Part shown: positions 1,795 through 62,319 of the stretch, piece by piece
Numbering within the stretch: position 1 is the first letter of the stretch
Layout of the letters: each line of letters opens with the position of its first letter
Origin: Ruditapes philippinarum
Lineage: Eukaryota
Assembly (NCBI RefSeq): GCF_026571515.1
Contig: NW_026852821.1
Span: 186,001 to 250,000 of the forward strand
Direction of reading: 5' to 3'
Length of the DNA: 64,000 nt
Notes under the pieces: generated by a model
What the model was told of the DNA's origin: nothing
Seen by the model: the letters and a program-made list of their open reading frames with translations, nothing else
Databases searched by the model: none
Made by a program: the position numbers and the translations under genes

Positions 1795-2110
1795 AGCTGC
1801 TAATAAAGTCTGAAACCCCTTCAATGTACTTTTTATCAAGTTTTCCCATTGTTTTCAAATGAAACTAAAAATTTAACTGAATTTAACTGAAATGCACCCT
1901 CTTAAATGCACCCTCCCGCTTGAATGAAAACGTTACAGTGAAGGAACCATGATGAAAGACGTATGAACACATCTACCGATGCTTCTGAATTCTACAATCC
2001 TGAAACATTTTCGTGTCTGAAAGCTGTGTTGTGCTTGAGCCGGTGCTAGGGGGGCATGGACTATAGATTACATTTACCACTGCCGGCCATCAATTTTAAC
2101 CTGCAAAATT
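1795..2110 (+). mobile_element. Degenerate copy of the long-form structured non-coding element
   Basis: GAAGGAACCATGAT...ATGAACACATCT..CGATG and GCTTGAGCCGGTGCTAGGGGG match 10367-10475. Confidence 0.7.
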
Positions 2111-3019
2111 TTCGATGTCACCATATAACTCGTATTTGTGATGCTTCCATTTTCTCCATTTGTAGGACGGCTTTAGTAATTAGCACTTAATGCCTTGAGA
2201 ATTAAAGAGGAAATTAATTGTCGTTTAATTTGCCTTTCATGGGAAAGTGTAACAAGATTGCTTTACAGAGGTAATAAAACCTATCTCGTTTGAGCTTTAG
2301 ACAAGCAAACGATGTACTCTTAATGTTATATTTTAGGACGTTAAATCAATCGCATTGTTTGTTTAAGTCATCTGAAAGAACAGTTGGTAACAGATCATGC
2401 AATGCTTTACCATTATTTTTTGTATTTTTGTTTGTTTGAAAACTTTTTTTATCATATATTGTCAAAAAATGAATACACTTTTTTAACCATACTTGATTTT
2501 GATCCAATTGTATCATTCATAACATATTCATTTTCTATCAAATACGTTACTATATAATATGTAGGATACTTCTTTATCCTCATTATCATCATTGGAATAG
2601 GTTACTGAGTTACATATAAAAAAATATGTAATAAAACAATAGAAAAGGAACATTCCCGGGATTCCAAACTGGATCAATTTATAACATGACAAAACAAGAA
2701 TATCTGAGGATCTCTTGAATGAGTTGATCATTGATCATCTGAGGTATATAACAATCGTACAATAATGCTAATGCATTTAATTAAGATCACATTAAAAACA
2801 TGGTATCATATGGCGATGATTGTAAGAGTATGAACGAACGGGATTATCTCTTATTATTGTGATGCCGTCAAGATTTCTTTTTCAGAGAAGGACTACAAAG
2901 AGGGAATATTATGATATAAAACTAGTAAAGTTTTGCTCTTAATATAAACCATGTGAATATAAATAAATAATTATTATATGTTATTTACGTTCCTACAAAT
3001 GTCTTGTTTTCTTAACCAG

Positions 3020-3283: not shown

Positions 3284-3291
3284 AAGAATTT

Positions 3292-3422
3292 GACTAGGGG
3301 ATGTGGACGGTAACATACACTTTCATTTTCCGTTCATGAACGGGATTAATCAAATCGAACCTGCAACATTTTAAATTGTGTCGTTTTTGTAGTTCTCTTG
3401 GAATTCCTTTTGGTCTATTTTG
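3292..3422 (+). mobile_element. 5'-truncated degenerate copy of the structured element (3' domain)
   Basis: CTAGGGGATGTGGACGGTAAC...CCGTTCATGAAC...AATCAAATCGAACCTGCAACATTTT...CTATTTT matches 10468-10596. Confidence 0.75.
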
Positions 3423-8047: not shown

Positions 8048-8343
8048 TAAAATTCTGGAAACAAAGTGATCCCTCGGAAGCATTAATCACAACAAAATTT
8101 CAAGAGAATTGCAGACTCGGTTTGATTGAGTCTGTACATGAGGGATAATGAATAAGTGCAACACCCCTCACGCCCCCTAGCACCGGCTTGAGCGGTACTC
8201 AATTTTCAACACTTAATAGTGCTGGCATCAATGATCCCGAAGGACCAGAAAATATAACAACACTGAAGTTAAGTACGGGGCAACTTTTTACAGCTGCCGA
8301 ACGGCACTTGACACCTGCTGTTGTGAAGTATAAAATTCTTGAA
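8048..8343 (-). mobile_element. Short-form (~283 nt) structured non-coding element with 13-nt terminal redundancy
   Basis: TAAAATTCTGGAA (8048-8060) and TAAAATTCTTGAA (8331-8343) flank the unit. It carries all conserved blocks of the long form and is absent from the paralogous SINE at ~16390. Confidence 0.8.
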
Positions 8344-8515
8344 TTTTAGGTTACCGGCTTCAAATCACTTGCCCATCACCTCTGTAAGCTCAAGTCTTGT
8401 CGATGACTGTAATGAAATTATCCATCTAGCTCATGGAAGGTCGATGGTTATACTTAGCTACTCGCTCGTGTCTGTTATTAAGCCCAAAGGGACACCTTAG
8501 GCCTCCTTCCACAAT

Positions 8516-8724
8516 ATAGTTTGTTTGTTTGTTTCATTTTACGCCTTTTTCCAACAGTATTTCAGTCATATAGGCGGGTAGTTTACTAACCATCGTTTCT
8601 GGAGAGTTACACCAGTACTAGACTACCTTACTTCGCGCTAAACTACCAAAGCATCTCCCGGGGATCGAACCATGCCAGAGAGGTAACTGGATTAGAAGTC
8701 ATCGACTCTAACCACGGAGGCGGT
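8516..8724 (-). mobile_element. tRNA-derived SINE, second family, with 13-bp TSD
   Basis: TSD CTCCTTCCACAAT at 8503-8515 and 8725-8737. Minus strand has B-box GGTTCGATCCC and an (AAAC)n tail. Confidence 0.85.
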
Positions 8725-8778
8725 CTCCTTCCACAATTAAAGTTGGAAAGTCGCCGTATGGCCGTTAGAGTGTTTGTG

Positions 8779-9316
8779 CGAGTCTGCAATTCTTATGTAA
8801 TTTTGTTGTGATTAATGCTTCCGAGGGATCACTTTGTTTCCAGATTTTTTTCTCTTTTCTTGTTGGTTCCAGTATTCCTGACTTGAATACTGTTGAAATA
8901 CCCTTAAGATATGTGACCTGCTTTTTAAATTTGTCTTTTGACGTCTTATCTGTGATATGCAGGCTTCATAACCTCTGACCCCCTTTCAAATTTCCATTGT
9001 ATTTGTTTAAGCCCATTGTTTTCTCGTTTAGGGCACACGCATTTTTTATGACTTGGGGACCATATGCCGTTTTCATGGAATGTCATATTGAATGTTAAAT
9101 GATAACCGCCATATGAATACATCTGCGGATGTTTAAAAATTGTACCAGTTCATGTAAAATTTTGAATTCTACTTAAACCGGTGGTAGGAGGCGTGGACGG
9201 TAGTTCGCACTTGACGTACACACGGTCCATGAACAGGCTTGATCAAACCGAGCTTGCAACATTTTCAATTTTGCAGTATTTGGCTTTCTTTGGGGATTCT
9301 TGTTTTATCTATTTGT
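8779..9316 (+). mobile_element. Composite insert: short-form 3' tail (8779-8847) fused to a 5'-truncated long-form copy (~8855-9312)
   Basis: 8779-8847 is the near-exact reverse complement of ~8050-8119. 8855-9312 aligns to ~10118-10596. Confidence 0.8.
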
Positions 9317-9717
9317 TTCACACCGACAGCACAAACAGACACACTATGAAAGCCTATTAGAATAATCACAGATTGACAATTATCTTAAATATGTCGTGGG
9401 ATACCTAAATTCTATCTGAAACACATGTTCAGGAAAGTTATTTTACAAACGACACAAATCGCATCAGAATTTTTTTTAATAAGTTTATGCTCATTCCCGG
9501 ATAATGTATTTCAATATAGAATTAGCCTGTATAAAATTTTGAATTTTTTTTTGAAAAAATTGGTTCTCGCGTAAAACGCTCAAATATAAGTTTATTCATA
9601 GTTTGCTCTTTTGCAGTAGTTAGGATTGTTAAGACCGAATTTCTCTACTCTTCCGAATGTGTTGGTGTTATATACATGATGTGACGTGAATTTGCTTTAC
9701 AAATTAAATTGATGAAC

Positions 9718-10597
9718 TGGCACTAACGTGTCACATTGAAGGTTCCATGATAACCGCCATATGAACACATCTGCGGATGTTTCAAAATTCTAAATTTTAC
9801 CAGTTCATGTTAAATGTTGAATTCTGCTTAAGCCGGTGCTAGGGGGCGTGGACGGTAACTTGCACTTGACAGTACCGTCCATGAACAGGCTCAATCAAAC
9901 CGAGCCTGCAACATTTTCAATTTTGCCGTGTTGGGCTTTCTTTAGGGATTCTGTATTTATCTATTTTATGATCACATCCGTGTTATTTGTGCCGTGTGGC
10001 GGCTGTAAAAAGTCTCCCCGTACATTTAATCAATGATGTTATATTTTTGATCCTTGAAGATCGTTCAGCACGACATTATTGTTGTGCTTGTGGTATTTTT
10101 AGTTTCAACTTTTTGGCATTTTCTAGTTGGGTGGTTCCAATATTCCTTCTTGAATAATGTTGAATCACCCTTAGGATATGTTGCCTGCTTTTTAAATTTG
10201 TCTTTTGACGTCTTATCTGTGATACGCAGGCTTCATAACCTCAGATCCCCTTTCAAAATTCAATTTTATTTAGTTCCGCCCATTGTTTTCTCGTTTAGGG
10301 CACACGCATTTTTTTACTTGGGGACCATATGCCGCTTTTCATGGAATGGCACTAACGTGTCACATTGAAGGTTCCATGATAACCGCCATATGAACACATC
10401 TGCGGATGTTTCAAAATTCTAAATTTTACCAGTTCATGTTAAATGTTGAATTCTGCTTAAGCCGGTGCTAGGGGGCGTGGACGGTAACTTGCACTTGACA
10501 GTACCGTCCATGAACAGGCTCAATCAAACCGAGCCTGCAACATTTTCAATTTTGCCGTGTTGGGCTTTCTTTAGGGATTCTGTATTTATCTATTTTT
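9718..10597 (+). mobile_element. Long-form structured element, ~1.4 tandem units (period 629 bp, 250-bp direct repeat)
   Basis: 9718-9967 appears identical to 10347-10596. The whole block is missing at the paralogous site ~16895-16912. Confidence 0.9.
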
Positions 10598-13429
10598 TGA
10601 CTAATACGAGTATAGGATTTTAAAACCAAGAGTTTGAAAGTTGTTTTTTTTTTCAAAAGAATTCTCATTTTGAATTATTAAACTTACTACGACAAAGTTC
10701 TAGAAATATGCCGAATTTCATTCGGTATAGAAATATTGTCATGAAAAAAATAATCAAACGATACACACTTCACAGATGCACCAGTGATTATTACGTATTA
10801 CAAACATAAGCCATTGTCTAAGTGCAAACATGATGACGAACATAACTTTACAGATCCAATTTATGTATTGCTATATTTATAACACATGTGTATGCTAATA
10901 ACGCTTAGATTCTAAATATTTTTGTTTAATTATCAAAAAGCTAATATTTATAGGAATATTAGTATAATTTCAATCAATGTATCATTTAGCTCTATAAATA
11001 AAATTCTGTCGGTTCATTTCATTACTTAACATGTATTTACAGGAATTATCACAGTCGTTTCAAAGAAAATCAGATAAAAGGTAGGCTGTCAATGCTCCAT
11101 CCAAGTATGTACTAAAGATTATTATCAGGGACTTCAGAAACTGCAGGTTTTTAAGTACTTACTTCGATTCAGAAACTGCAGGTTTTTAAGTACTTTCCAG
11201 CACGAGATAGTTTCGCATTTTTTATCAAATCAATAAAATTGTACTTAAAATCATTTCTGTCTAGGAATAAACGGTATTCTGTACTTGATCTTTGTCAATG
11301 TGAACTGCATTTGTATTGGCAATGACTTTTTGACTAACCAACTAGTTTCAATAAAATAAAATTGTTAAGTTTTTTAGAATGTCATTATATCATTATTCAA
11401 CATATTTTGAACAAATGGACAAAATTAATATATTATCTTCATTGAACTTCATAGCTCTTCTATTTATATTTAAAATTTGTTACGTGTCGCAATTTTTTAT
11501 TATGAAAACTACGCGTTACACATGCTATTTTGTAAAGACATTATATACTGCATTTGCGCAGACCAAAATGTGTATTGCAATTGAGATTTTGCATAAATTT
11601 GACAGTTATATAAACTATTGTGAAGATCTGACAATATTTCGAATTTTAAGCGGAAAATCCACTTCCTTTAGAAACAGCAGGTTCCAGTTAGTCTATTGTT
11701 TCCTATATATGATTTGTGGAAAATAATACAAGTCAAAATATATAGTTTCATAAGACCAAAGTCATCAATACTCGTCCGATTTTAAAATACTTTTAATAAA
11801 TTTTAAGGAAACCGACAATGTGGTTGGCTACTGAGAAAATTCCAGTCTAAGTCGCTTTCGATTATAACAAAAGGAATCCAGCTCTTGTCAGTCAGTCTGA
11901 ATAAAAAGAAATATATTCACTTTCTCCAAAACAAAACAAGTTGAAAAGCGAGGGATAATTGGATAGTTAAATCCACAATCATACGACTCCGTGTTGTATA
12001 GAAACATTCATTTGATGCTAGCGCCTATCAACAGTTAATATGTATTTGAAATACCATCAAGAGTTTTACAGAAATGTAAAGACATTCCCACTGAAAGAGA
12101 AATAAATAAATCGGAAGATAACCTTTACAACCAAGTGTCGTTTTATATCGCATAACGAAGGTAAGTAACATCGGTAAAATATTTTACTCCCGGCATTCCA
12201 GAAGACGGCTTTTTATCAACAAAAAAGCTGCTAAAAAGTTATTACATTGAGCGATGGTTTACAACAAGCTACAAGTGAAGCAATGCTGCCGTTATTGACA
12301 GATTAATTGCATCAAAAACTGCAATCATATGTCGCTGATAAGTTAAACACAAAATGAATACTAGTTTTTGCAATACCGGCTTTATTGATAAAGCGTTGAT
12401 ATGTAATAATTTGAAAAATGTTCATGCGATAGATTATATCAGTTGCTGATTTAAACAATGGTTGTTAAAAGGAATCTTAAAGTATGTGTTCCGACAAGTA
12501 TCAATATACTTCGGTTAACTGTTTCTTCAAAAGCGGATCCATAGCCAATTTACGCAATGCTTATTCTAAGAAAACTGAATATGCATAGGTCAAAGATTGA
12601 GTGCGTGTAACCGATTAATTTTATTTTTTGAATAGCTACGCTCATATTATATTTTTGGACATATGTTATATAATGTACAATCACATTAGAAGTCGATGTG
12701 TTAATTCATGCATAAAAAATCAACGATGTCCTTGGAGCAGAACTATAAAATACGCATGAAATGCACAAATTCACAGAAATTTTAATTAAATGTTAGTTTA
12801 TTGCCCCGGGAAGAGGTAACGTAATTGGAATTTCCTCATTTGCCATTCATGAGGAAAATTAAACTGTTAACAAATCGCGACTTCTATTAGATATTCACAT
12901 GCAGCATTTGGGCTATTGATGATCTTTACATGTTGTAGAAAGCAGTTGTTAATGTTTTCAAATATTTCACCGTATTTCATATATTAAGATATCTTATTTT
13001 GTTGGTCGTCCATATGAAAAAAAAGAAATTTAAAGAAAAATTACATTGTCACCGAACTGTGAACTGCGAAACAACATAAAGTGTTATATATTCCTGACAC
13101 TTATGCCATAATTATGACGATCAATGTGATATCATTTTATTATTTATTTATTTTTGAGAATTTAATAAAAACTATAATCTTAATCTTTTTGACAATGAGA
13201 AAAAGTATTATAAAAAACAATGATTTTTTTCTCTATTATATGGCGAATATCCTTTAGAAATATAGAAATAGGAGGAATTCAATGTAATCACTACGAGAGG
13301 GATTATGAAAATCTGAACAATTAAAATGTTATAATAATATATCAATTAAACATTTACTTTGATTTTGCAAATGCTCTATATTTGCTATAATTGTTTTTTT
13401 TTTTTTCGTTTTTATTTATTTATTGTTCG

Positions 13430-13640
13430 TTGGCTTCTAACCGGTTGCCCCACCCAGATTACCCTACCAATATTATTGGATTATTTCACGTGAGAAAGCT
13501 ATCCAGCCTGATTACGGAACATCGGTTGTTCTACTCAGGTGTTCGTTTGTGATAAAATAAAACACACATGGGGGTCCTGGTGTCTTCCTCTTCAAAGCAA
13601 AGCTGGAAACACGGCGCCATACCACATTACTGCTTTGTTG
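13430..13640 (+). mobile_element. Degenerate tRNA-derived SINE (paralogue of ~20105-20380)
   Basis: GCTATCCAGCCTGATTACGGAACATCGGTTGTTCTACTCAGGTG...TCTTCCTC..AAAGCTGGAA matches the 14837-15115 family. Confidence 0.8.
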
Positions 13641-14836
13641 CGATTTTTTTATCCTATGCATCAATCAATGACTCCTGCTTTAAGCTTTTCATTGGCCTAT
13701 TATGCCTCAGAAATGCTATCATTTTTATTTATCAAAACTTTGAATGTTTGGTATCTTGTTACAGTTTATAAAAATATACTCATTTGCCATATAGACAAAC
13801 TATCTTTGATATTTTTCTTTGTTGGACATTGGTACAAAATGTATAATTACAGTGAATGCGTATTATGTATCGAAGTCAAAATACTTCTTTGTTTTCATTT
13901 TGCTATCTTTACGACACATTACTGCATGTTCACTACTACTTTCTTCAACTGCTAAACATATTACATACTGTAAAAGCATTATTAAATTATCATTTAACAC
14001 ATGTTTGACATTTCTAAGATATTAAATGAATATGAATTTCTGAGATAAAATGTACCTTTAAACCACATATTTATAAAAATTGATAAAAATTACAGTAGTT
14101 AAGACTCAATTGTTCCGTCGAGTATTCTTTATTTCAGATGTCGTTCTTTCAAATATGTGTTACAATTTCAATTTTGCATATGTTTGACAGTTTTATAAAT
14201 TATTATACCTGACAATACTTCAAATTTTAAGTTAAAAGTCCACTTTCTTGAGAAACATTGTAAGTCTAGTGTTCCCTATAAATAATTTCAAAACGAATTT
14301 TATTACATAAAATATCTTGTTTTAAATGAATAAATTCAATACTCAAGTGATTTGCTGGATGCTTTATTCATTTGAAAAAATATTCTGAAATTGACTATTC
14401 TTATATTAAAAGAAATGCGCTAGAAAAGACAGACTTTAAATGCTATTTAAAAGATTCCAATTCGTTTTCATTGATACGCTTAAAAATTTACACGGATGTT
14501 TTGGTTTTCCTGTATTCCTATTTGTATTATTTGTAGTAAAAAATTATAGTGTGTGACTTAAATACAAAATGAAAACACATTTTGGACACTTTTGAGCAAC
14601 AAACAATCTCCGTTTCTTGCAATATTTTATCACTTTTAAAGGTTAATGCTATCTGCGTAAGGCCTTCGCACTACAATGTGATCAGGTAAGTATGTCGTGA
14701 CAGAAAATGATTGCGATAAAAGATTAACTATCTAGTCAACGAATATATAAATAGACTTCTATATAATTATATCGTTATAAAGAGTAAATTAATACGTGAT
14801 TGTAACTAATTTGTTTATTTTGATATCTTTGCCGAT

Positions 14837-16374: not shown

Positions 16375-16600
16375 ATCCGAGTGGCCGAGTGGGTAAGGTT
16401 ACCGACTTGAAATCGCTTGCTCACATCACTAAGTGCGAGTTGAGTCTTGTCGACGACCTTGGATATTTTCACGTAATTGAAGCTATCAGCTCGTCTCTGC
16501 AATAAAGCTCAAAGGGAAACTTTAGGTCTTCCTCCACTTTTTAAGTTAAGTAAGAAAGTCGCCTTATTTGCGGGACTTCAAATCCGACAAAACATATAAA
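16375..16600 (+). mobile_element. Degenerate tRNA-derived SINE
   Basis: GTGGCCGAGTGGGTAAGGTTACCGACTTGAAATCGCTTGC...GGTCTTCCTCCAC...AAAGTCGCC. Confidence 0.8.
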
Positions 16601-18299
16601 CAAACTCTAGAAGCTTATTAGAATAATCACGGATTATAGATTATTATAAATGTTTCATTGGATACCTTAAGTCTTTCTGAAACACATATTTACAAAAAAA
16701 ATAATTTACAAATGCTTTGTTTTAAGCTTAGTTCAGGATAATGTATTTCAACAAAGACATACATTTATATATTATCAATTTTATCAGAAAATTTGCTATT
16801 TTTGCAGTCGTTAGGATTGTTTTGTTAGAATTTCGCTTCTCTGAGTGTTGGTAATATGCTCATTCTGTGACATAAATTTGTTTTATAGATAAAATTAAAT
16901 AACTTTAATTGGATTTTAAAATCTTTAGTCTTACACTTTATACATTTTCCAAGCAAATTCTTACCCTTTTTTACTTATTAAACTTTACTACGGCAACAAT
17001 TTAGAACAATTCCGAATTTCATTCAACATAAAAGTAATTGCATTACAAGGGACCTTTATCAGCGTTTCAAAAGAAGGCAATAGACACAATTTTAGCAGAT
17101 GCATAAATGTTAGTCAAGTATTAAAAACATAAGCCATTGTCTTTAAGTTAGTGAAATCATGTTGACGAACATAGCTTTAGAGATTCAATTTATTCATTGC
17201 GATACATATAACGAATTTGTATGCCAATAACGCACGCTTAGTTTCTTTATATTTTTGTATAGTTATAATTATCAAACAACTAAGTATTATAGGGATATTA
17301 AAGCTTTTTCAACTTCTGTACCATTCAGCACTATAAATTATATTTTGTCAGTTCATTTCATTACTTACAAGGCTTTATAGGAATGCGTCAGAGATGCTAT
17401 CGCAGTCGTTTCAAAGGAAATCAGATAAAAGATAGGCTGTCAAAGCTCCATCGAAGTATGTACTTAAGATTACTATCAGATACTTCAGAAACTGCAGGTT
17501 TTGAAGTACATTCGATCACGAGTAAATTAAGCAATTTTCACTCGATCATTAGAATTGTACTTTAATTTATTGCTGACTAGAAATACAATGTATCCCATGC
17601 ATGATCTTTGTCACTGTAAACTGTAATTGTATTGGTCATGACTTTGTGACGTACCAAACATCCTCAATAAAATGAAGATGTTATGAATTTCGTTATTCAA
17701 CATATTTTGAATAAATGTTAAAACAATACATAATATTATCTACACTGAACTTTATAACTCTACTGTTAGAATTTTTGAGTTGCAATTTTGTGTTATGAAA
17801 ACTACGCATTTCACATGCTATTTTGTAAAGACCTTATTTAGTGCGTTTGCGAAGACCAAAATGTTTATTGCAATCGAGATTTTGCATAAATTTGACAGTT
17901 ATATGAATAATTGTTCAGATCTGACAATATTTCAAATTTTTAGCATAAAACCCGCTTCCTTTAAAAACAGCAGGTTCCAATTAAACTATTGTTTTCTATA
18001 TATAACGAAGGCAAAATATATAGTTACGCATAACCGAAGTCATCAATACTCGAGTGACTGTGGAATTGCTTTTAATAACTTTGAAGGAGATTCTGACAAT
18101 TGTTATGTGCACGATGTGGTGGGCTACCGATAAAACGCACAGAGTCAGTCGATATCAATTTTAACCAAAGGAGACTAGCTCTTTACAATTAAGTTGCTAA
18201 AATCAGAACTAACAGCTATGATTTCTGCATTTAATTCATTTCTAAATAACAATACAATTAAAATTTGATAGTAAGATTTTCTTCATTTAAACTGTGGAA

Positions 18300-18522
18300 A
18301 AAGGATAATCCATCGGAATCAGTAATCACAACACAATTACATGAAAATTGCATACTCGGTTTGATTCGATCTGTATATGAAAAAGGGCAACATCATTCAC
18401 GCCTCAAACACCGGTTTGAGTGGTACACAGATTTCAGCACTAGAAAGTGCTGCTATTAATGATCCTGAAATACCAGGAACTATTAAAATACTTTAGTACG
18501 GGACAATTTTTTTTACAGCTAC
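18300..18522 (-). mobile_element. Degenerate short-form structured element
   Basis: TGCATACTCGGTTTGATT...CACGCC..ACACCGGTTTGAG...AATGATCCTGAA...AGTACGGGAC..TTTTTACAGCT is collinear with 8060-8297. Confidence 0.8.
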
Positions 18523-20104
18523 ATTAATTGATGCACTCGGAATTTCACTTGTTCTTGACATATAATCTGAATAAAAAGTAACATGTGCAACTTTTCTAAA
18601 AACAATTTTTATTGTGAGAAATATTGATGTTAGCTCCTTTCAACAGCTAAGTTACATATGAAATATCAAAATGTAACTAAATTCAAAACGTAAATAAAAT
18701 CTGATCTTAAACTTTATACTACAATTCAAGAAATAACCATGCAGCTTTTTATATAACATATTTACATAAATAGATACAATATTTTACACCTGCATTCCAG
18801 AAGACGGCTTTTTATCAAAGATAAAAACGGCATTGCATTGGACATTTTCAGGTGAAGGAATGCTCCCGTTTATTAATTGACAGATTAATTGCATTGAAAA
18901 CTTCAATCATATTTCATGGTTAAAAAAATAAACTGTATTAGTGTTTTTGCAATACCGGCGTAATTGATAAAACGTTATATAATAATTTGATTTTTTATCA
19001 TAATTGATGGTTACGCGATATGTTATATCAGTTACTGCTTGAAACAACGCATGGTATAAGGAATCTTTACGTATGTTCTCCGCCAAGTATCAATATGCTT
19101 TGGTCAACTGTTTCATCAAAGACGAATATATATAGCGCATTTACACAATGCATACTCTGAAGAGATAATTAAAATAATTGAGTGCCTATGATCGACTTGT
19201 TTCATATATAATAGTAACAGTCAAACATAATAATTATATTTTTGAACAGATGTTGTATAAGTGTAAAAAATGAACAATACATGTATTTACAATTGCAGTT
19301 GATGTCTTAATACGTAAAAAAAATACAACGATGTCCTTGGAGCAGAACTATAAAACACGCATGAAATGCACACATTCACAGAAATTATAATTAAATGTCA
19401 GTTTATTGCCCCAGGAAGAGGTAACGTGATTGCATTTTCCTCATTTTCCATTGATGAGGGAAATTAAACTGTTAACAAATAGCGACTTCTATTAGATATT
19501 CACATGCAACATTGGGACTATTGCTGATCTTTACATGCTGTGGAAAAAAGTAAATGCCTTCAAATATTGCTACCGTTTTTCATATGAGATTGATTTCTTT
19601 GTCATCCATGTATCGATTGACAAAAGAACATTGTCATCGCAACTGAACCGCGAAACAACAAGTGTTATATTTTCCAGACATACTTGTACACAACGATTGT
19701 GATATAAATGATTCAGGGTTATGAGTATTTTCGTTTTTAATTGAACGCTTATCTGATTTTCTAACAGAAAACATATTTAAATGATACACATGATTCTCTA
19801 GATTTATGTTCCCTCAATCACTGTTAATATCATATCGCGATCAATGTGATTTGACTTTTTTGAGAAATTGGGTAACAATATTAAATATGTTATATAAATT
19901 ATACCTTAATCTTTTTAATAAATGAGTTAATTGTGATAAAAATCAAATATTTTTCTCTTTTTTTATGAAGAATATCCTTTTGAAATGAGAGGAATTCAAT
20001 GTAATCACTATCATGATAAGAAAGAAAGGTAAGAGGCTATCGAATCTACCCACGAACAACTTAATTTGATCATTGCAAATAGCTATATATTTTCTATTTT
20101 GGCG

Positions 20105-20380
20105 TCTTTGTGGGACTAATGTAGTCTAGTGATTAAAGTCGTTAATTTCAAACCACTTGCACCTCGTCTCTATTGGTCCGGATCCTGCAAGGGTCTTTGA
20201 CTCTTTCATGTGATGAAGTTATCCAGTCGGCTTAAGGAACATCGGTTGTTCTGCTAAGGTACTCGTTCTGCTCAGGTGCTCGGTCATGCACGGAGGGTTC
20301 CCGAGGTCTTTCTCCACTAATAAAGCAGGAAAGTCACCATATCACCTTTATTGTGTTGTTGCAACATAAACAACAAACAA
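20105..20380 (+). mobile_element. Degenerate tRNA-derived SINE
   Basis: TTCAAACCACTTGC...TATCCAG...GGAACATCGGTTGTTCT...GAGGTCTTTCTCCAC with an AAAC-rich tail. Confidence 0.8.
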
Positions 20381-22204
20381 AATGACGTATTTGAACAAAA
20401 CTTAAACTTATTATCAACACCGTACTTCATACCTCATTTTGTCTTGTGTGTTTAATGTTGTTGTTATTGTTGTTTTGTGTGTGGGGTTTCTTTTGGTAAG
20501 TCTCGCAAGTTCATCTTATACAAAAAAATAAGACCAGATATACTAATATTCGCATTGACTCTATGCAACGATCAATATGAATACTTTTTACTCTTGTTTT
20601 AAGCATTTTCAACACACTTATTTATTAAGTCAGAACTTTCGTCGGGTATTCTTTATCGATATCAGAGGTCGTACTTTCAAATATGTATTGCAATTTCAAT
20701 GTTGCATAAATTTGACAGTTTTATGAATTATTGATAGCATAAGTTCAAAATTCACTTTCTTAAGAAACAGCATTAGTCTGGTTTGCCCTATAAATAACCG
20801 AAAAACGAATTGTATTTAAGAAAATATCTTGTTTTCAATAAACGACTTCAATACTCAAGTGATTCGTAATATTTTATAAATTCAATTGAAAAAAATTCTG
20901 AAATTGGATTTTCATATATAAAGTAAAAAGGAAATGCGCTAAAAGATTAAGAAAAAGACAGGACTAACTATCCTTCAATTCTATCTGAAGGAATCCAATT
21001 CGTAAGCTTTAATTAAAAAACCTTAAAAATCATTATACGAAATTTTTGGTTTCCTTTTTCCTCCTTGTAATTAATTTTTCAGAGTTAAATATTTTACTTG
21101 GAAATTTAAGTACTACATGACAACACAGTTTGTCATGTCAGTCTATTTGAGCAAACTCCGTCATAGTTTTCTTGCAATATATTATCACATTTAAAGGTAA
21201 ATGTTATCGACGTAAGGCCTTCGCACTACAATTTGATCGGGTGTGTATGTCGTGACAGAAAATGATTGCGACAAAAGATTAACTCAACAACGTATATCTA
21301 AAAAGGTTTATGTGTCTATATATATCGCTATAAACGGCTAACGAGGGCACCGACACGTGTTTGTTACTAATTTGTTACTATTGATGTCTTTACCAATAAG
21401 CGTTAATTGGCAATGAAAATAAAGTAAGTTAAATTTGATAGCAGATATGATACAAATTGCGCATGTCATGATAAATGTACTTTATAACCAATACTAAATA
21501 TTGTATAAAAAAAAGAAGAATCGAGAGACTGTTGTACATTTGTTGAAATGTATGTATAAATCATTTCTGTCGAAGTGGTATAAATGGAATATGTATGTTT
21601 GAATAAAGAAACGAGCCTTTATCACTGTAAGAGCTCTATCAACGGCATCTGATGGTAAGTGTATAGTAGCGACAGAATACATGAGTGTTTATTATATTTT
21701 GCAAGTTTTCTTTATTCGGAATTGATAAACATGTATCAGCATTACGTTCCTGAAATTTAAAGATATTTTAAAGTGGTTAGTAAGTTGTGATGCAAACTGA
21801 CAAAACTGGAAAAGTTTTCAATAATTATTTTATTAACTTCTTAAAATGTTCTTAAACCAGCATTTTAACGATAGACTTATCCTAAACGGTTAATTTACTT
21901 TAAAAGAAAATTCAACAAAATATGAAATTTGCTTTGACATGAAAAGGATTACGTAAGTAACGAAATTGTAAGTCATTTCTTAAGTTCAATTCAGTTTAAA
22001 TCGATTTCATTTATATAGCATATAAAAGAGTTGAAAAATTCAGAAGAATGCCATTATTATTAGTTCCTATCACGAAAAGTAATCGTAAGCATTCTTTGTT
22101 AGTAATAAGAATTTAACTATAATTTTGTCTTGTTCACTCATGTACAACCTCATGTTCTCTTATATTTTCTTTTAATGGAATCTTGCAAGTCTTTACAGTC
22201 TGAT

Positions 22205-37306: not shown

Positions 37307-37619
37307 TTACACATCTTTTACCCTAAAGAGTTAACCGTTACAATAATAATGACAATAATAGTCAATTAAAATACCATCAAACGAAACATGCTTTTTAAAA
37401 CGACTGTCCGTCTTCTAGTCAGTTTTCAGAACATTTTATTCAAAATGTTTAGAACTGTTCATGATAAAATCATACGCAGGAAACAAACCAAATACAAAGG
37501 CAATAAATATTAATTGAGATATTTCACACACACTAGAGTTGAACTGCCGATGCAATGAATAATACAAAAGATCGCTGTTAAGTTCTTGAAAGATAGCAAA
37601 AAAAAAGACTTGGCAGTAG

Positions 37620-37728
37620 TTTGCACTTGACAGTACCGTCCATGAACAGGCTCAATCAAACCGAGCCTGCAACATTTTCAATTTTGACGTGTTGGGCTTT
37701 CTTTAGGGATTCTTTTTTTCTCTATTTT
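37620..37728 (+). mobile_element. Young 5'-truncated copy of the long-form structured element
   Basis: TTGCACTTGACAGTACCGTCCATGAACAGGCTCAATCAAACCGAGCCTGCAAC...AGGGATTCT is nearly identical to 10489-10581. Confidence 0.9.
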
Positions 37729-61800: not shown

Positions 61801-62160
61801 TCTATACACATAAACCCTTTGATTTACTTTTTCAAAAACTTTGAGGGAATGATGATTTGCAAAGATTGTTTACGTCAATCACTCTGACCTGAGATAAGAA
61901 AATGTATGATGATTGAACAAAAGTGTTTTTTATTCTCAAATAATTTTAAGAGAGTTTATCTTGAGCATGTCAAAACAATCAAATACAACATGAAAGGAAC
62001 AACCACCATGTCACTCTGCTGGTACTTTAGCCTCTTTACTCTAGAAATACTTGTTAACAAAATAACATAGTACCTGAACACTTATTACGCTTTCTTTGCA
62101 GAACTACGTTTATTAATAATAGAATTAATAATAGTCATTCATATAAATAACGAAAATTAT

Positions 62161-62260
62161 GTGCTTTAGCTGGTTCTAGCGGTGTAAGAGATGTTGCCAT
62201 GTTACATTTCCCCTCATGGACACACTCAATCAAACCGAGTCTGCAAGTTTCACATAATTA
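62161..62260 (+). mobile_element. Degenerate 3' domain of the short-form structured element
   Basis: GCTTTAGCTGGTTCTAG...CCCCTCATGGACACACTCAATCAAACCGAGTCTGCAA matches the reverse complement of 8109-8192. Confidence 0.75.
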
Positions 62261-62319
62261 AGTTGTATTTTAATTGAAAACAAATTAAATGTTTCTATAA
62301 AATAAAAATAATACTTTGT

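What the first reader, a model, noticed from the sequence alone, without database searches (positions are those of the whole stretch)
9718..10597. Partial-tandem (1.4x) insertion implying a circular or re-copied template
Seen: 9718-9967 is repeated apparently exactly at 10347-10596 (period 629 bp), and the first copy starts mid-element. The paralogous locus (~16890-16920, AAATTAAAT...GGATTTTAAAA) lacks the whole block, which fits a single recent insertion. Established: a 5'-truncated partial tandem is typical of retrozymes (circular RNA templates) and Penelope-like pseudo-LTRs. I found no CTGANGA hammerhead core on either strand of the monomer. Inference: a retrozyme-like element processed by a different mechanism.
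Basis: partly seen in the sequence, partly recalled or inferred. Interest (0 to 1): 0.82.

Follow-up and report, generated by a model that had tools for sequence, protein, structure and literature searches.

The report
Concatemer-forming non-coding retroelement, Penelope-style
The 1.4-copy block is one young insertion of a very abundant, non-coding 629-bp mobile element of a clam-like mollusc that always lands as head-to-tail strings with a fixed 3' end and a ragged 5' end, the signature of Penelope-like retroelements; it has no hammerhead ribozyme and there is no sign of an RNA circle.

Summary
Window 9718-9967 equals 10347-10596 exactly (250 nt, period 629), and the diverged paralogue at 16904-16908 lacks the block.

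It is one copy of a family with more than 2,200 candidate loci in this 1.4-Gb mollusc genome. Every sampled array (1.4 to 4.65 units, 98-99% identical) ends at the same ...TATCTATTTT, and 35 different 5' starts were seen.

Four empty-site reconstructions show no target duplication. The cut falls right after TT, and 3-5 nt of microhomology mark the 5' joint in the two cases where it could be read. Units are near-identical within an array.

The 3' tail and a tail-to-head structure flanking the unit boundary keep their base pairs through many compensatory changes. They use G-U pairs, so the intermediate is + strand RNA.

No Rfam ribozyme and no CUGANGA were found. RNA reads are sparse and show no sharp ends.

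Best reading (0.55): a non-autonomous retroelement copied by target-primed reverse transcription from a concatemeric RNA, with initiation at an internal fixed site. This is what is described for Penelope-like elements, which are abundant and young here. An RNA-circle template is not excluded (0.2).

This is a new member of a known kind.

The parts
9718..9971 (+). Upstream 5'-truncated partial unit (canonical positions 376-629). It is the pseudo-LTR-like first copy.
   Evidence: Exact 250-nt repeat of 10347-10596. It is in register with the family unit.
9972..10600 (+). Full 629-nt unit, used here as the canonical unit. The family 3' end ...TATCTATTTT lies at 10587-10596. The following TTGA resembles the ATGA found at internal junctions.
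   Evidence: More than 40 genomic units at 96-99% identity. The same 3' end is present in all arrays.
10441..10563 (+). Structured 3' tail core, made of a closing helix plus three hairpins. A second copy lies at 9812-9934.
   Evidence: 95.7% of cells are paired against 34-44% when partners are slid. 11 pairs show compensatory changes between long and short forms. Model R1 scores 148.9 bits.
9918..10081 (+). Tail-to-head structure. The last ~55 nt of one unit pair with nt ~78-110 of the next. This encloses the unit boundary (9967|9968 to 9971|9972) and the conserved head hairpins.
   Evidence: RNAalifold predicts 49 pairs, 19 of them with compensatory changes across three lineages. The 12-bp core helix is 96.7% paired against 30-72% when slid.
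8851..9317 (+). Older 5'-truncated long-form copy (about 83-85% identity) with the same 3' end.
   Evidence: R1 hit at 9157-9282, 110 bits.
8780..8850 (+). 3' fragment of the related short form (unit ~283 nt, ends ...CCAGATTTTT). It abuts the older long-form copy.
   Evidence: Sequence read. Short-form alignment.
8048..8343 (-). Short-form copy (head plus tail modules only).
   Evidence: R1 hit at 8084-8207, 129 bits.
37616..37728 (+). Long-form fragment of 113 nt, 5'-truncated, 94.7% identical, with the same 3' end.
3285..3421 (+). Old tail-only fragment. Similar old fragments lie at 2019-2129 (+), 62152-62271 (+) and 18323-18435 (-).
16904..16908 (+). Empty site in the old paralogous segment.

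Best explanation
The block is a young insertion of a non-autonomous, non-coding retroelement with a 629-nt unit. A 283-nt short form shares its 5' 'head' and 3' 'tail'.

Shown:
- Copies are dispersed.
- All copies stop at one 3' end and start anywhere in the unit.
- Many copies hold several complete head-to-tail units.
- Insertion makes no target duplication, and the cut lies just after TT.
- The 5' joint uses a few bases of microhomology.
- Units of one array were identical at birth.
- The tail, and a tail-to-head duplex around the unit boundary, are conserved RNA structures of the + strand.

Inferred:
- A tandem array is transcribed into a concatemeric RNA.
- A reverse transcriptase supplied in trans binds the tail/head structure. 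It starts cDNA synthesis at the single-stranded CUAUUUU site on a nicked target, with no homology to that target.
- It runs back through one or more units and tends to stop in the structured head.
- The other end is then joined by microhomology.

This is the behaviour reported for Penelope-like elements (pseudo-LTRs, internal initiation, both strands cut at ATT-like sites). A Penelope-like element is therefore the most likely driver, and the upstream partial unit is a pseudo-LTR. No self-cleavage and no RNA circle are required.
For: Fixed 3' end, variable 5' ends and arrays of 1.4-4.65 units at 98-99% identity in about 40 scored loci out of 2,202 candidates.

5' starts: 35 different values. 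19 of them fall in the first 165 nt, which is the structured head (p=4e-4).

Empty sites: L062 against L064 is exactly contiguous. L012, L026 and L014 lie inside older family copies. All four show no duplication and 0-2 nt lost, and the upstream flank ends in TT in three (in L014 the TT falls within the ambiguous junction bases). Microhomology at the 5' joint is GCTT in L012 and GTT or GTGTT in L014. Two further TT^ sites came from nested copies read.

Homogeneity at birth: within-array divergence has a median of 0.7% against 1.7% between arrays. Of the variants that differ within an array, 111 are private singletons and 40 are shared with other arrays.

RNA structure with compensatory changes and G-U pairs, hence strand-specific. 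The unit folds with a z-score of -5.45.

The genome holds many young Penelope-like elements. There are 531 GIY-YIG candidates. One family has an intact 821-aa ORF with RVT_1 followed by a C-terminal GIY-YIG. That family has 5,895 candidate copies at 94-99% identity with a fixed 3' end and a partial tandem in L077.

Head-to-head inverted 5'-truncated pairs occur at two regions.

Literature:
- PMC8557442: pLTRs; hammerhead-less Naiads dominate bivalve genomes; non-autonomous elements with multicopy head-to-tail insertions.
- PMC11167929: internal initiation on multi-copy RNA, a start site not homologous to the target, ATT cleavage of both strands.
Against: No autonomous element sharing the tail or head was found. 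The one Penelope-like family examined has no significant similarity to the unit (nhmmer, model R1). Only a 14-nt identity was seen by eye.

The 30-40-bp 'tail extension' typical of many Penelope-like elements is absent.

Penelope-like elements are described as giving variable target duplications. Here all four sites show none.

A purely linear concatemer model makes daughter arrays no longer than their source, so arrays should shrink. Some way of regrowth must be assumed. One composite array, L024 with unit types GA,GA,TC,TC,GA, hints at in-register re-insertion or recombination.

The tail-head pairing fits a circle or a monomer panhandle as well as a concatemer.
Confidence: 0.55

Rival explanations
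1. Retrozyme-like route. Unit-length RNA is released from array transcripts and circularised, either by an unrecognised self-cleaving motif in the conserved boundary structure or by host enzymes. A reverse transcriptase then runs round the circle, giving more than one unit per insertion.
For: Arrays are homogeneous at birth. Arrays of up to 4.65 units occur without known long master arrays. The unit is strongly self-paired, z=-5.45. Conserved helices place the unit's 3' end and 5' start side by side in an internal loop. Metazoan retrozymes are tandem, non-coding and AT-rich (PMC7229834).
Against: No hammerhead, twister, HDV-like or other Rfam ribozyme at E<=10, and no CUGANGA. Two RNA runs give only 10-37x on a family of thousands of copies. 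Coverage peaks on the tail shared by truncated copies instead of being even. No preferred read ends appear, and many reads run into specific flanks. Those libraries may be poly(A)-selected, so this evidence is weak. Hammerhead cleavage was dispensable for insertion by a Penelope-like enzyme in vitro (PMC11167929).
Confidence: 0.2
2. A LINE reverse transcriptase (CR1/L2/RTE-like, 'stringent' type) recognises the tail stem-loops, as for SINEs. Concatemers arise by template jumping from the 5' region to the 3' end, which the panhandle holds nearby.
For: There are 17,700 RT candidates, and the best-scoring ones are young LINE-like copies. The tail has stem-loops followed by a T-rich end with an ATTCTGTA-like octamer that recalls CR1-type 3' ends; this resemblance is from my own knowledge and was not tested. 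5' truncation and 5' microhomology are also LINE hallmarks.
Against: Regular multi-unit arrays are not a known LINE/SINE signature. None of the 30 RT loci carries the tail within 1.5 kb downstream of the RT domain. The two tail fragments seen there (L062, L070) are ordinary insertions. There is no target duplication and no Pol III-type head.
Confidence: 0.15
3. A DNA-level process: a Helitron-type rolling circle, an LTR/TRIM element with 250-bp LTRs, or a local tandem duplication or assembly artefact.
For: No target duplication, as for Helitrons. The window copy alone looks like LTR-internal-LTR.
Against: The 5' boundary differs in every copy, so there is no LTR. There is no TC...CTRR and no A^T target. 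There is no PBS or PPT. The conserved structure relies on G-U pairs of one strand. The same junction recurs in dozens of contigs and in raw reads of independent runs.
Confidence: 0.04

Closest known systems
Non-autonomous Penelope-like (Chlamys) elements such as MRC1 of Chlamydomonas, and pseudo-LTR formation by Penelope-like elements in general (PMC8557442; mechanism in PMC11167929)
   Same: A common 3' end, frequent 5' truncation, partial tandems and multicopy head-to-tail insertions. No ribozyme is required, as in Naiad and most Chlamys elements. A T-rich or ATT-like cut site. Initiation at a fixed RNA site unrelated to the target. Occasional head-to-head inverted copies. Very high copy number in a bivalve-like genome.
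   Different: No autonomous relative sharing the 3' end has been identified. No 30-40-bp tail extension. Uniformly no target duplication in four sites. The host is an animal rather than a green alga.
Metazoan non-LTR retrozymes (PMC7229834; bioRxiv 10.64898/2026.07.22.740005)
   Same: Non-coding, AT-rich, dispersed head-to-tail repeats. Highly self-paired unit RNA. A proposed dependence on Penelope-like elements.
   Different: No type I hammerhead or any other known ribozyme. The unit is 629 nt (short form 283 nt) against 170-400 nt. No evidence of abundant circular RNA.
SINEs mobilised by stringent LINEs
   Same: Non-coding. A structured 3' tail that is conserved between subfamilies. 5' truncation.
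   Different: No Pol III-derived head, no target duplication, and insertion as concatemers.

Membership tests
Metazoan non-LTR retrozyme | Dispersed head-to-tail repeats of a short non-coding unit | tested here: met
   The consensus carries only a 111-aa ORF with no Pfam match, and it is not preserved in copies.
Metazoan non-LTR retrozyme | Self-cleaving hammerhead (type I) in each unit | tested here: not met
   Rfam cmscan at E<=10 over 8700-10700, which includes a complete unit and a junction, found none. CTGANGA is absent on both strands.
Metazoan non-LTR retrozyme | Abundant unit-length linear and circular RNA | tested here: inconclusive
   One search shows low, uneven coverage on both strands and no preferred ends. 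The library type may exclude circles. Head-to-tail reads cannot distinguish a circle from a tandem array.
Penelope-like, non-autonomous (pLTR-forming) | Common 3' end with frequent 5' truncation, plus partial tandem or multicopy head-to-tail insertion | tested here: met
Penelope-like, non-autonomous (pLTR-forming) | Sequence similarity of the 3' end to an autonomous Penelope-like element of the same genome | tested here: inconclusive
   One family (L073) was tested and shows no similarity.
Penelope-like, non-autonomous (pLTR-forming) | AT-rich or ATT-like cut site, with a reverse-transcription start not homologous to the target | tested here: met
   Six reconstructed targets are cut after TT. 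The 3' flanks (GAG, GAA, CAT, AAG, ATC) are unrelated to the CTATTTT end.
Penelope-like, non-autonomous (pLTR-forming) | Optional 30-40-bp 'tail' extension at one end; inverted 5'-truncated copy at the 5' side | tested here: inconclusive
   No extension was seen; the 3' ends vary by only a few nt. Head-to-head pairs occur at C10653 and C13045 only.
SINE | Head derived from tRNA, 5S or 7SL with a Pol III promoter; target duplication | tested here: not met
   No Rfam or ARAGORN hit. Runs of 5-7 T lie inside the unit. No duplication.
LTR retrotransposon / TRIM | Fixed LTR ends, a 4-6-bp target duplication, PBS and PPT | tested here: not met
   The 5' boundary differs in every copy. No duplication.
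Helitron/Helentron | 5' TC and 3' CTRR ends, insertion between A and T or between T and T, a hairpin close to the 3' end | tested here: not met
   Termini and flanks. The structure is specific to one strand through G-U pairs.

The most novel reading that the evidence does not exclude
The conserved structure that brings the unit's 3' end and 5' start together in one internal loop (CUAUUUU^AUGAUCACA; short form AAUUUU^GUACUUCACA) is a self-cleaving or ligating RNA of an unrecognised class. The family would then be a hammerhead-less retrozyme that spreads through 629-nt and 283-nt RNA circles.
Probability: 0.1. Interest if true: 0.85.

Novelty: new member of a known kind. Interest (0 to 1): 0.4.

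Why it matters
This family gives a clean natural data set on how Penelope-type insertion works in an animal. It offers thousands of young concatemeric copies, a precisely fixed start site lying in a single-stranded loop of a covarying RNA structure, blunt TT^ targets without duplication, and a 5'-end hotspot in the structured head.

A short RNA (tail plus head, about 170 nt) could serve as a minimal template for in vitro target-primed reverse transcription. It could also test whether pseudo-LTRs come from concatemeric RNA, from circles or from template jumps.

For genome annotation, such copies should not be called LTR elements, TRIMs or satellites.

Tried and rejected
- Autonomous partner, first route. 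The 30 best RVT_1 loci are LINE-like and hold no tail beyond two ordinary fragment insertions.
- Autonomous partner, second route. GIY-YIG hits were listed but could be fetched for one locus only.
- That one Penelope-like family (L073) is not related to the unit. No Rfam ribozyme at E<=0.1 in L073 or L077, the two loci scanned.
- The word search with its ORF found only relatives of 60% identity or less, the best named ones from Mercenaria. This species' own proteins are therefore not in that collection, and the look-up of encoding contigs was not used.
- The single metagenome scan with the invariant 19-mer gave five contigs. They hold short-form relatives at 72-81% identity, some in tandem, with no RT nearby. 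One lies in the 3' UTR of a GST mRNA-like contig.
- Earlier notes of the scan by sequence and by words gave nothing usable beyond titles.
- The idea that 3' ends read on into the next unit (AT, ATG after the T run) got only marginal support: 10 of 30 flanks start with AT against about 19% expected, and there is no ATG excess. It was dropped.
- Template switching between different RNAs as the main source of arrays was rejected, because arrays are homogeneous. Heterologous junctions, where a short-form 3' end abuts a truncated long form as at 8850|8851, are as well explained by the TT^ target at an element's own T-run.
- The 111-aa ORF of the consensus has no Pfam match, is intact in only 19 of 32 young copies, and is absent from the short form.
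- Pol III transcription was rejected because of T5-T7 runs inside the unit.
- Run X21, labelled RNA-Seq, behaves like Hi-C DNA, with chimeric reads at every GATC. It was used only as DNA.
- Not used: complex prediction, the structure tools and the large protein search.

Full report
**Observation**

The window holds no N. Positions 9718-9967 and 10347-10596 are identical over 250 nt, with a period of 629. Just outside the repeat the match is partial: 6 of 9 bases upstream, then a mismatch at 9968 followed by TGA on both sides.

The old tandem paralogue of this region aligns up to 9718 = 16904 and resumes at 10612 = 16908. It therefore lacks the block.

A second, older copy of the same element (8851-9317, about 84% identity) lies 400 nt upstream and is also missing from the paralogue.

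**The family**

The window is contig C1308 of a 1.4-Gb assembly in 15,874 contigs. RNA runs labelled 'mollusc metagenome' hold the element. The best named relatives of one of its retroelement proteins are from the clam Mercenaria.

A search of the genome with one period gave 2,202 candidate places. The 40 scored places gave 146 matches at 96-99% identity.

Laid out locus by locus, every array ends at the same place...GATTCTGTATTTATCTATTT(T). This defines the unit as window 9972-10600, with internal junctions reading TTTT-ATGA-TCAC.

Arrays hold 1.4 to 4.65 units. Shorter 5'-truncated single copies are common too (window 37616-37728).

Thirty-five 5' starts were read and all differ. Nineteen fall in the first 165 nt of the unit (p=4e-4).

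About half of the tails covered by reads continue into a head rather than into a flank (loose ends against depth at 9968-9969). The partial tandem is therefore the normal state of the family, not an oddity of this locus.

**A short relative**

A 283-nt 'short form' keeps only the head (canonical 18-94) and the tail (about 470-590), at 70-80% identity. It ends in ...CCAGAATTTT.

It also forms partial tandems. In the window it occurs at 8048-8343 on the minus strand and as a 3' fragment at 8780-8850.

Relatives of the short form occur in five JGI metagenome contigs. The superfamily is therefore older than the burst of the long form.

Model R1 finds about ten tail-bearing pieces in this 64-kb window alone.

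**How it inserts**

Four insertions could be compared with the uninterrupted target.

| Case | Target | Result |
|---|---|---|
| 79-nt short-form fragment in L062 | LINE copy; flanks map to L064 1344-1388 and 1389-1433 | No base duplicated or lost |
| Array in L012 | Older long-form copy | Contiguous target; ambiguous GCTT at the 5' joint |
| Array in L026 | Older long-form copy | Contiguous target |
| Array in L014 | Short-form copy | 0-2 nt lost; ambiguous GTT or GTGTT at the 5' joint |

In three of the four the upstream flank ends in TT; in L014 the TT belongs to the ambiguous GTGTT...TATT^GAAA...GCTT^CATA...TGTT^GAGC...TGTT^GAGA. Two more nested copies read give GCTT^AAGC and TCTT^ATCT.

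The bases after the cut have no relation to the element's CTATTTT end. Both strands are thus cut at the same position, synthesis starts without homology to the target, and the far end is sealed by microhomology.

Three of 19 young arrays sit inside older family members. This fits a preference for T-rich sites that the element itself provides.

Head-to-head inverted pairs of truncated copies occur in two regions.

**Arrays are born uniform**

Units of one array differ by a median of 0.7%, and units of different arrays by 1.7%. The youngest arrays show 0 differences in 550-625 nt.

Of the variants that differ within an array, 111 are private to one unit and 40 recur elsewhere. Variants carried by all units of an array are mostly subfamily markers.

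Each array was therefore copied from one sequence, either a homogeneous concatemer or a circle, and not pieced together from unrelated RNAs.

One array (C9968, L024) is mixed, with unit types GA,GA,TC,TC,GA at positions 526-527. This needs recombination or in-register re-insertion.

The window copy is of the minority GA type. About 90% of reads carry TC at 9868-9869.

**An RNA intermediate of the + strand**

The tail core (window 10441-10563) folds into a closing helix and three hairpins. Across 25 long and short copies, 95.7% of cells pair, against 34-44% when partners are slid. Eleven pairs changed on both sides, for example GGACGGUA/UACCGUCC against GAGGGAU/AUCCCUC. Several pairs are G-U, which the opposite strand could not form.

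A second conserved structure joins the last ~55 nt of a unit to nt ~78-110 of the head. It encloses the boundary and the head hairpins.

- RNAalifold on ten junctions from three lineages predicts 49 pairs, 19 with compensatory changes.
- The 12-bp core helix is 96.7% paired, against 30-72% when slid.
- The start point CUAUUUU^ lies in the single-stranded stretch between these helices.
- The 5'-end hotspot coincides with the structured head.
- The whole unit folds far better than shuffles, z=-5.45.

There are effectively only two or three lineages, so each compensatory pair counts few events. Their number within single helices is still hard to get by chance.

This pairing can form in a concatemer (tail with the next head, about 100 nt apart in both forms), in a circle, or as a panhandle of a linear monomer. 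It does not decide between them.

**No ribozyme, no circle seen**

Rfam (4,227 families, E<=10) finds nothing in the element, and CUGANGA is absent.

Two RNA runs of the species give only 10-37x. Coverage lies on both strands and is highest on the tail that truncated copies share. No position shows molecules preferentially beginning or ending. Sizeable groups of reads run into one particular flank, as expected for copies embedded in host transcripts.

Run X21, filed as RNA-Seq, shows chimeric joints at every GATC and equal strands. It behaves like Hi-C DNA and was used only to show that the junction exists in raw reads.

**What drives it**

The genome holds 531 GIY-YIG candidates.

One Penelope-like family was examined (L073). 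It has an intact 821-aa ORF with RVT_1 followed by a C-terminal GIY-YIG. It has 5,895 candidate copies at 94-99% identity that share one 3' end. It shows a partial tandem (L077) and no Rfam ribozyme at E<=0.1 in the two loci scanned (L073, L077).

That family shows no significant similarity to the unit.

Thirty LINE-like RT loci do not carry the tail.

The attribution to a Penelope-like enzyme therefore rests on the insertion signature and on published work.

- Penelope-like elements form pseudo-LTRs and multicopy head-to-tail insertions.
- Naiads lack hammerheads and dominate bivalve genomes.
- Non-autonomous Chlamys elements behave the same way (all three points from PMC8557442).
- A purified Penelope-like enzyme cuts both strands at ATT-like sites. 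It starts reverse transcription at an internal site of a multi-copy RNA, without homology to the target and without needing hammerhead cleavage (PMC11167929).

**Verdict**

The element works like a non-autonomous Penelope-type retroelement. It is not a retrozyme by definition, since it has no ribozyme. A circular template is possible but unsupported.

It is a new member of a known kind. It is of moderate interest as a well-defined substrate for studying how pseudo-LTRs arise.

Noticed in passing
window 8516-8721 (flanked by 8500-8515 and 8722-8737): A 206-bp insertion bracketed by a 16-bp direct repeat (GGCCTCCTTCCACAAT / GGTCTCCTTCCACAAT). It carries a B-box-like GGTTCGATCCCC on the minus strand, so it looks like a tRNA-derived SINE with a target duplication. 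This contrasts with the duplication-free element studied here. ARAGORN calls no tRNA.
   Followed up: partly
window 9317-14729 vs 16577-21284: An old tandem segmental duplication with a period of about 7.2 kb and 62-79% identity. It serves as the empty-site reference.
   Followed up: partly
L073 3634-6440 minus strand (G000:C10567): A very abundant young Penelope-like family. It has an intact 821-aa ORF (RVT_1 plus C-terminal GIY-YIG), a fixed 3' end about 345 nt after the stop, 5,895 candidate copies, and no Rfam hammerhead in the two loci scanned (L073, L077). Its 3' UTR holds a 14-nt identity (GATTCTGTATTTAT) to the 3' end of the studied unit. That identity is not significant on its own.
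   Followed up: partly
window 10033-10368; L004 1816-2151: The family consensus carries a 111-aa hydrophobic ORF (canonical 62-397). In the window copy it is broken by TGA at 10046-10048, where 97% of reads have C at 10048. It has no Pfam match, is intact in 19 of 32 young copies, and is absent from the short form.
   Followed up: yes
L024 (G000:C9968:100530-103454): An array of 4.65 units that mixes two subfamily types in the order GA,GA,TC,TC,GA at unit positions 526-527. This suggests in-register re-insertion, copy-choice or unequal exchange.
   Followed up: partly
run X21: A run filed as TRANSCRIPTOMIC RNA-Seq shows thousands of chimeric reads joined at GATC sites and equal depth on both strands. 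That is typical of a Hi-C (DpnII/MboI) DNA library, so the label may be wrong.
   Followed up: no
L083 37-645 and 2084-2256 (JGI contig Ga0210350_1158246): A metagenome contig with a complete glutathione S-transferase ORF and a short-form relative of the element about 1.4 kb downstream on the same strand. It may be an mRNA with the element in its 3' UTR.
   Followed up: partly
L062 1310-1388 vs L064/L067: A LINE-like family with copies 98% identical (RT ORFs open). One copy is interrupted in its coding region by a 79-nt short-form fragment. This was the cleanest empty-site pair.
   Followed up: yes
window 11133-11195: A 28-nt segment repeated exactly at a spacing of 35 nt (TTCAGAAACTGCAGGTTTTTAAGTACTT). 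It is unrelated to the element.
   Followed up: no
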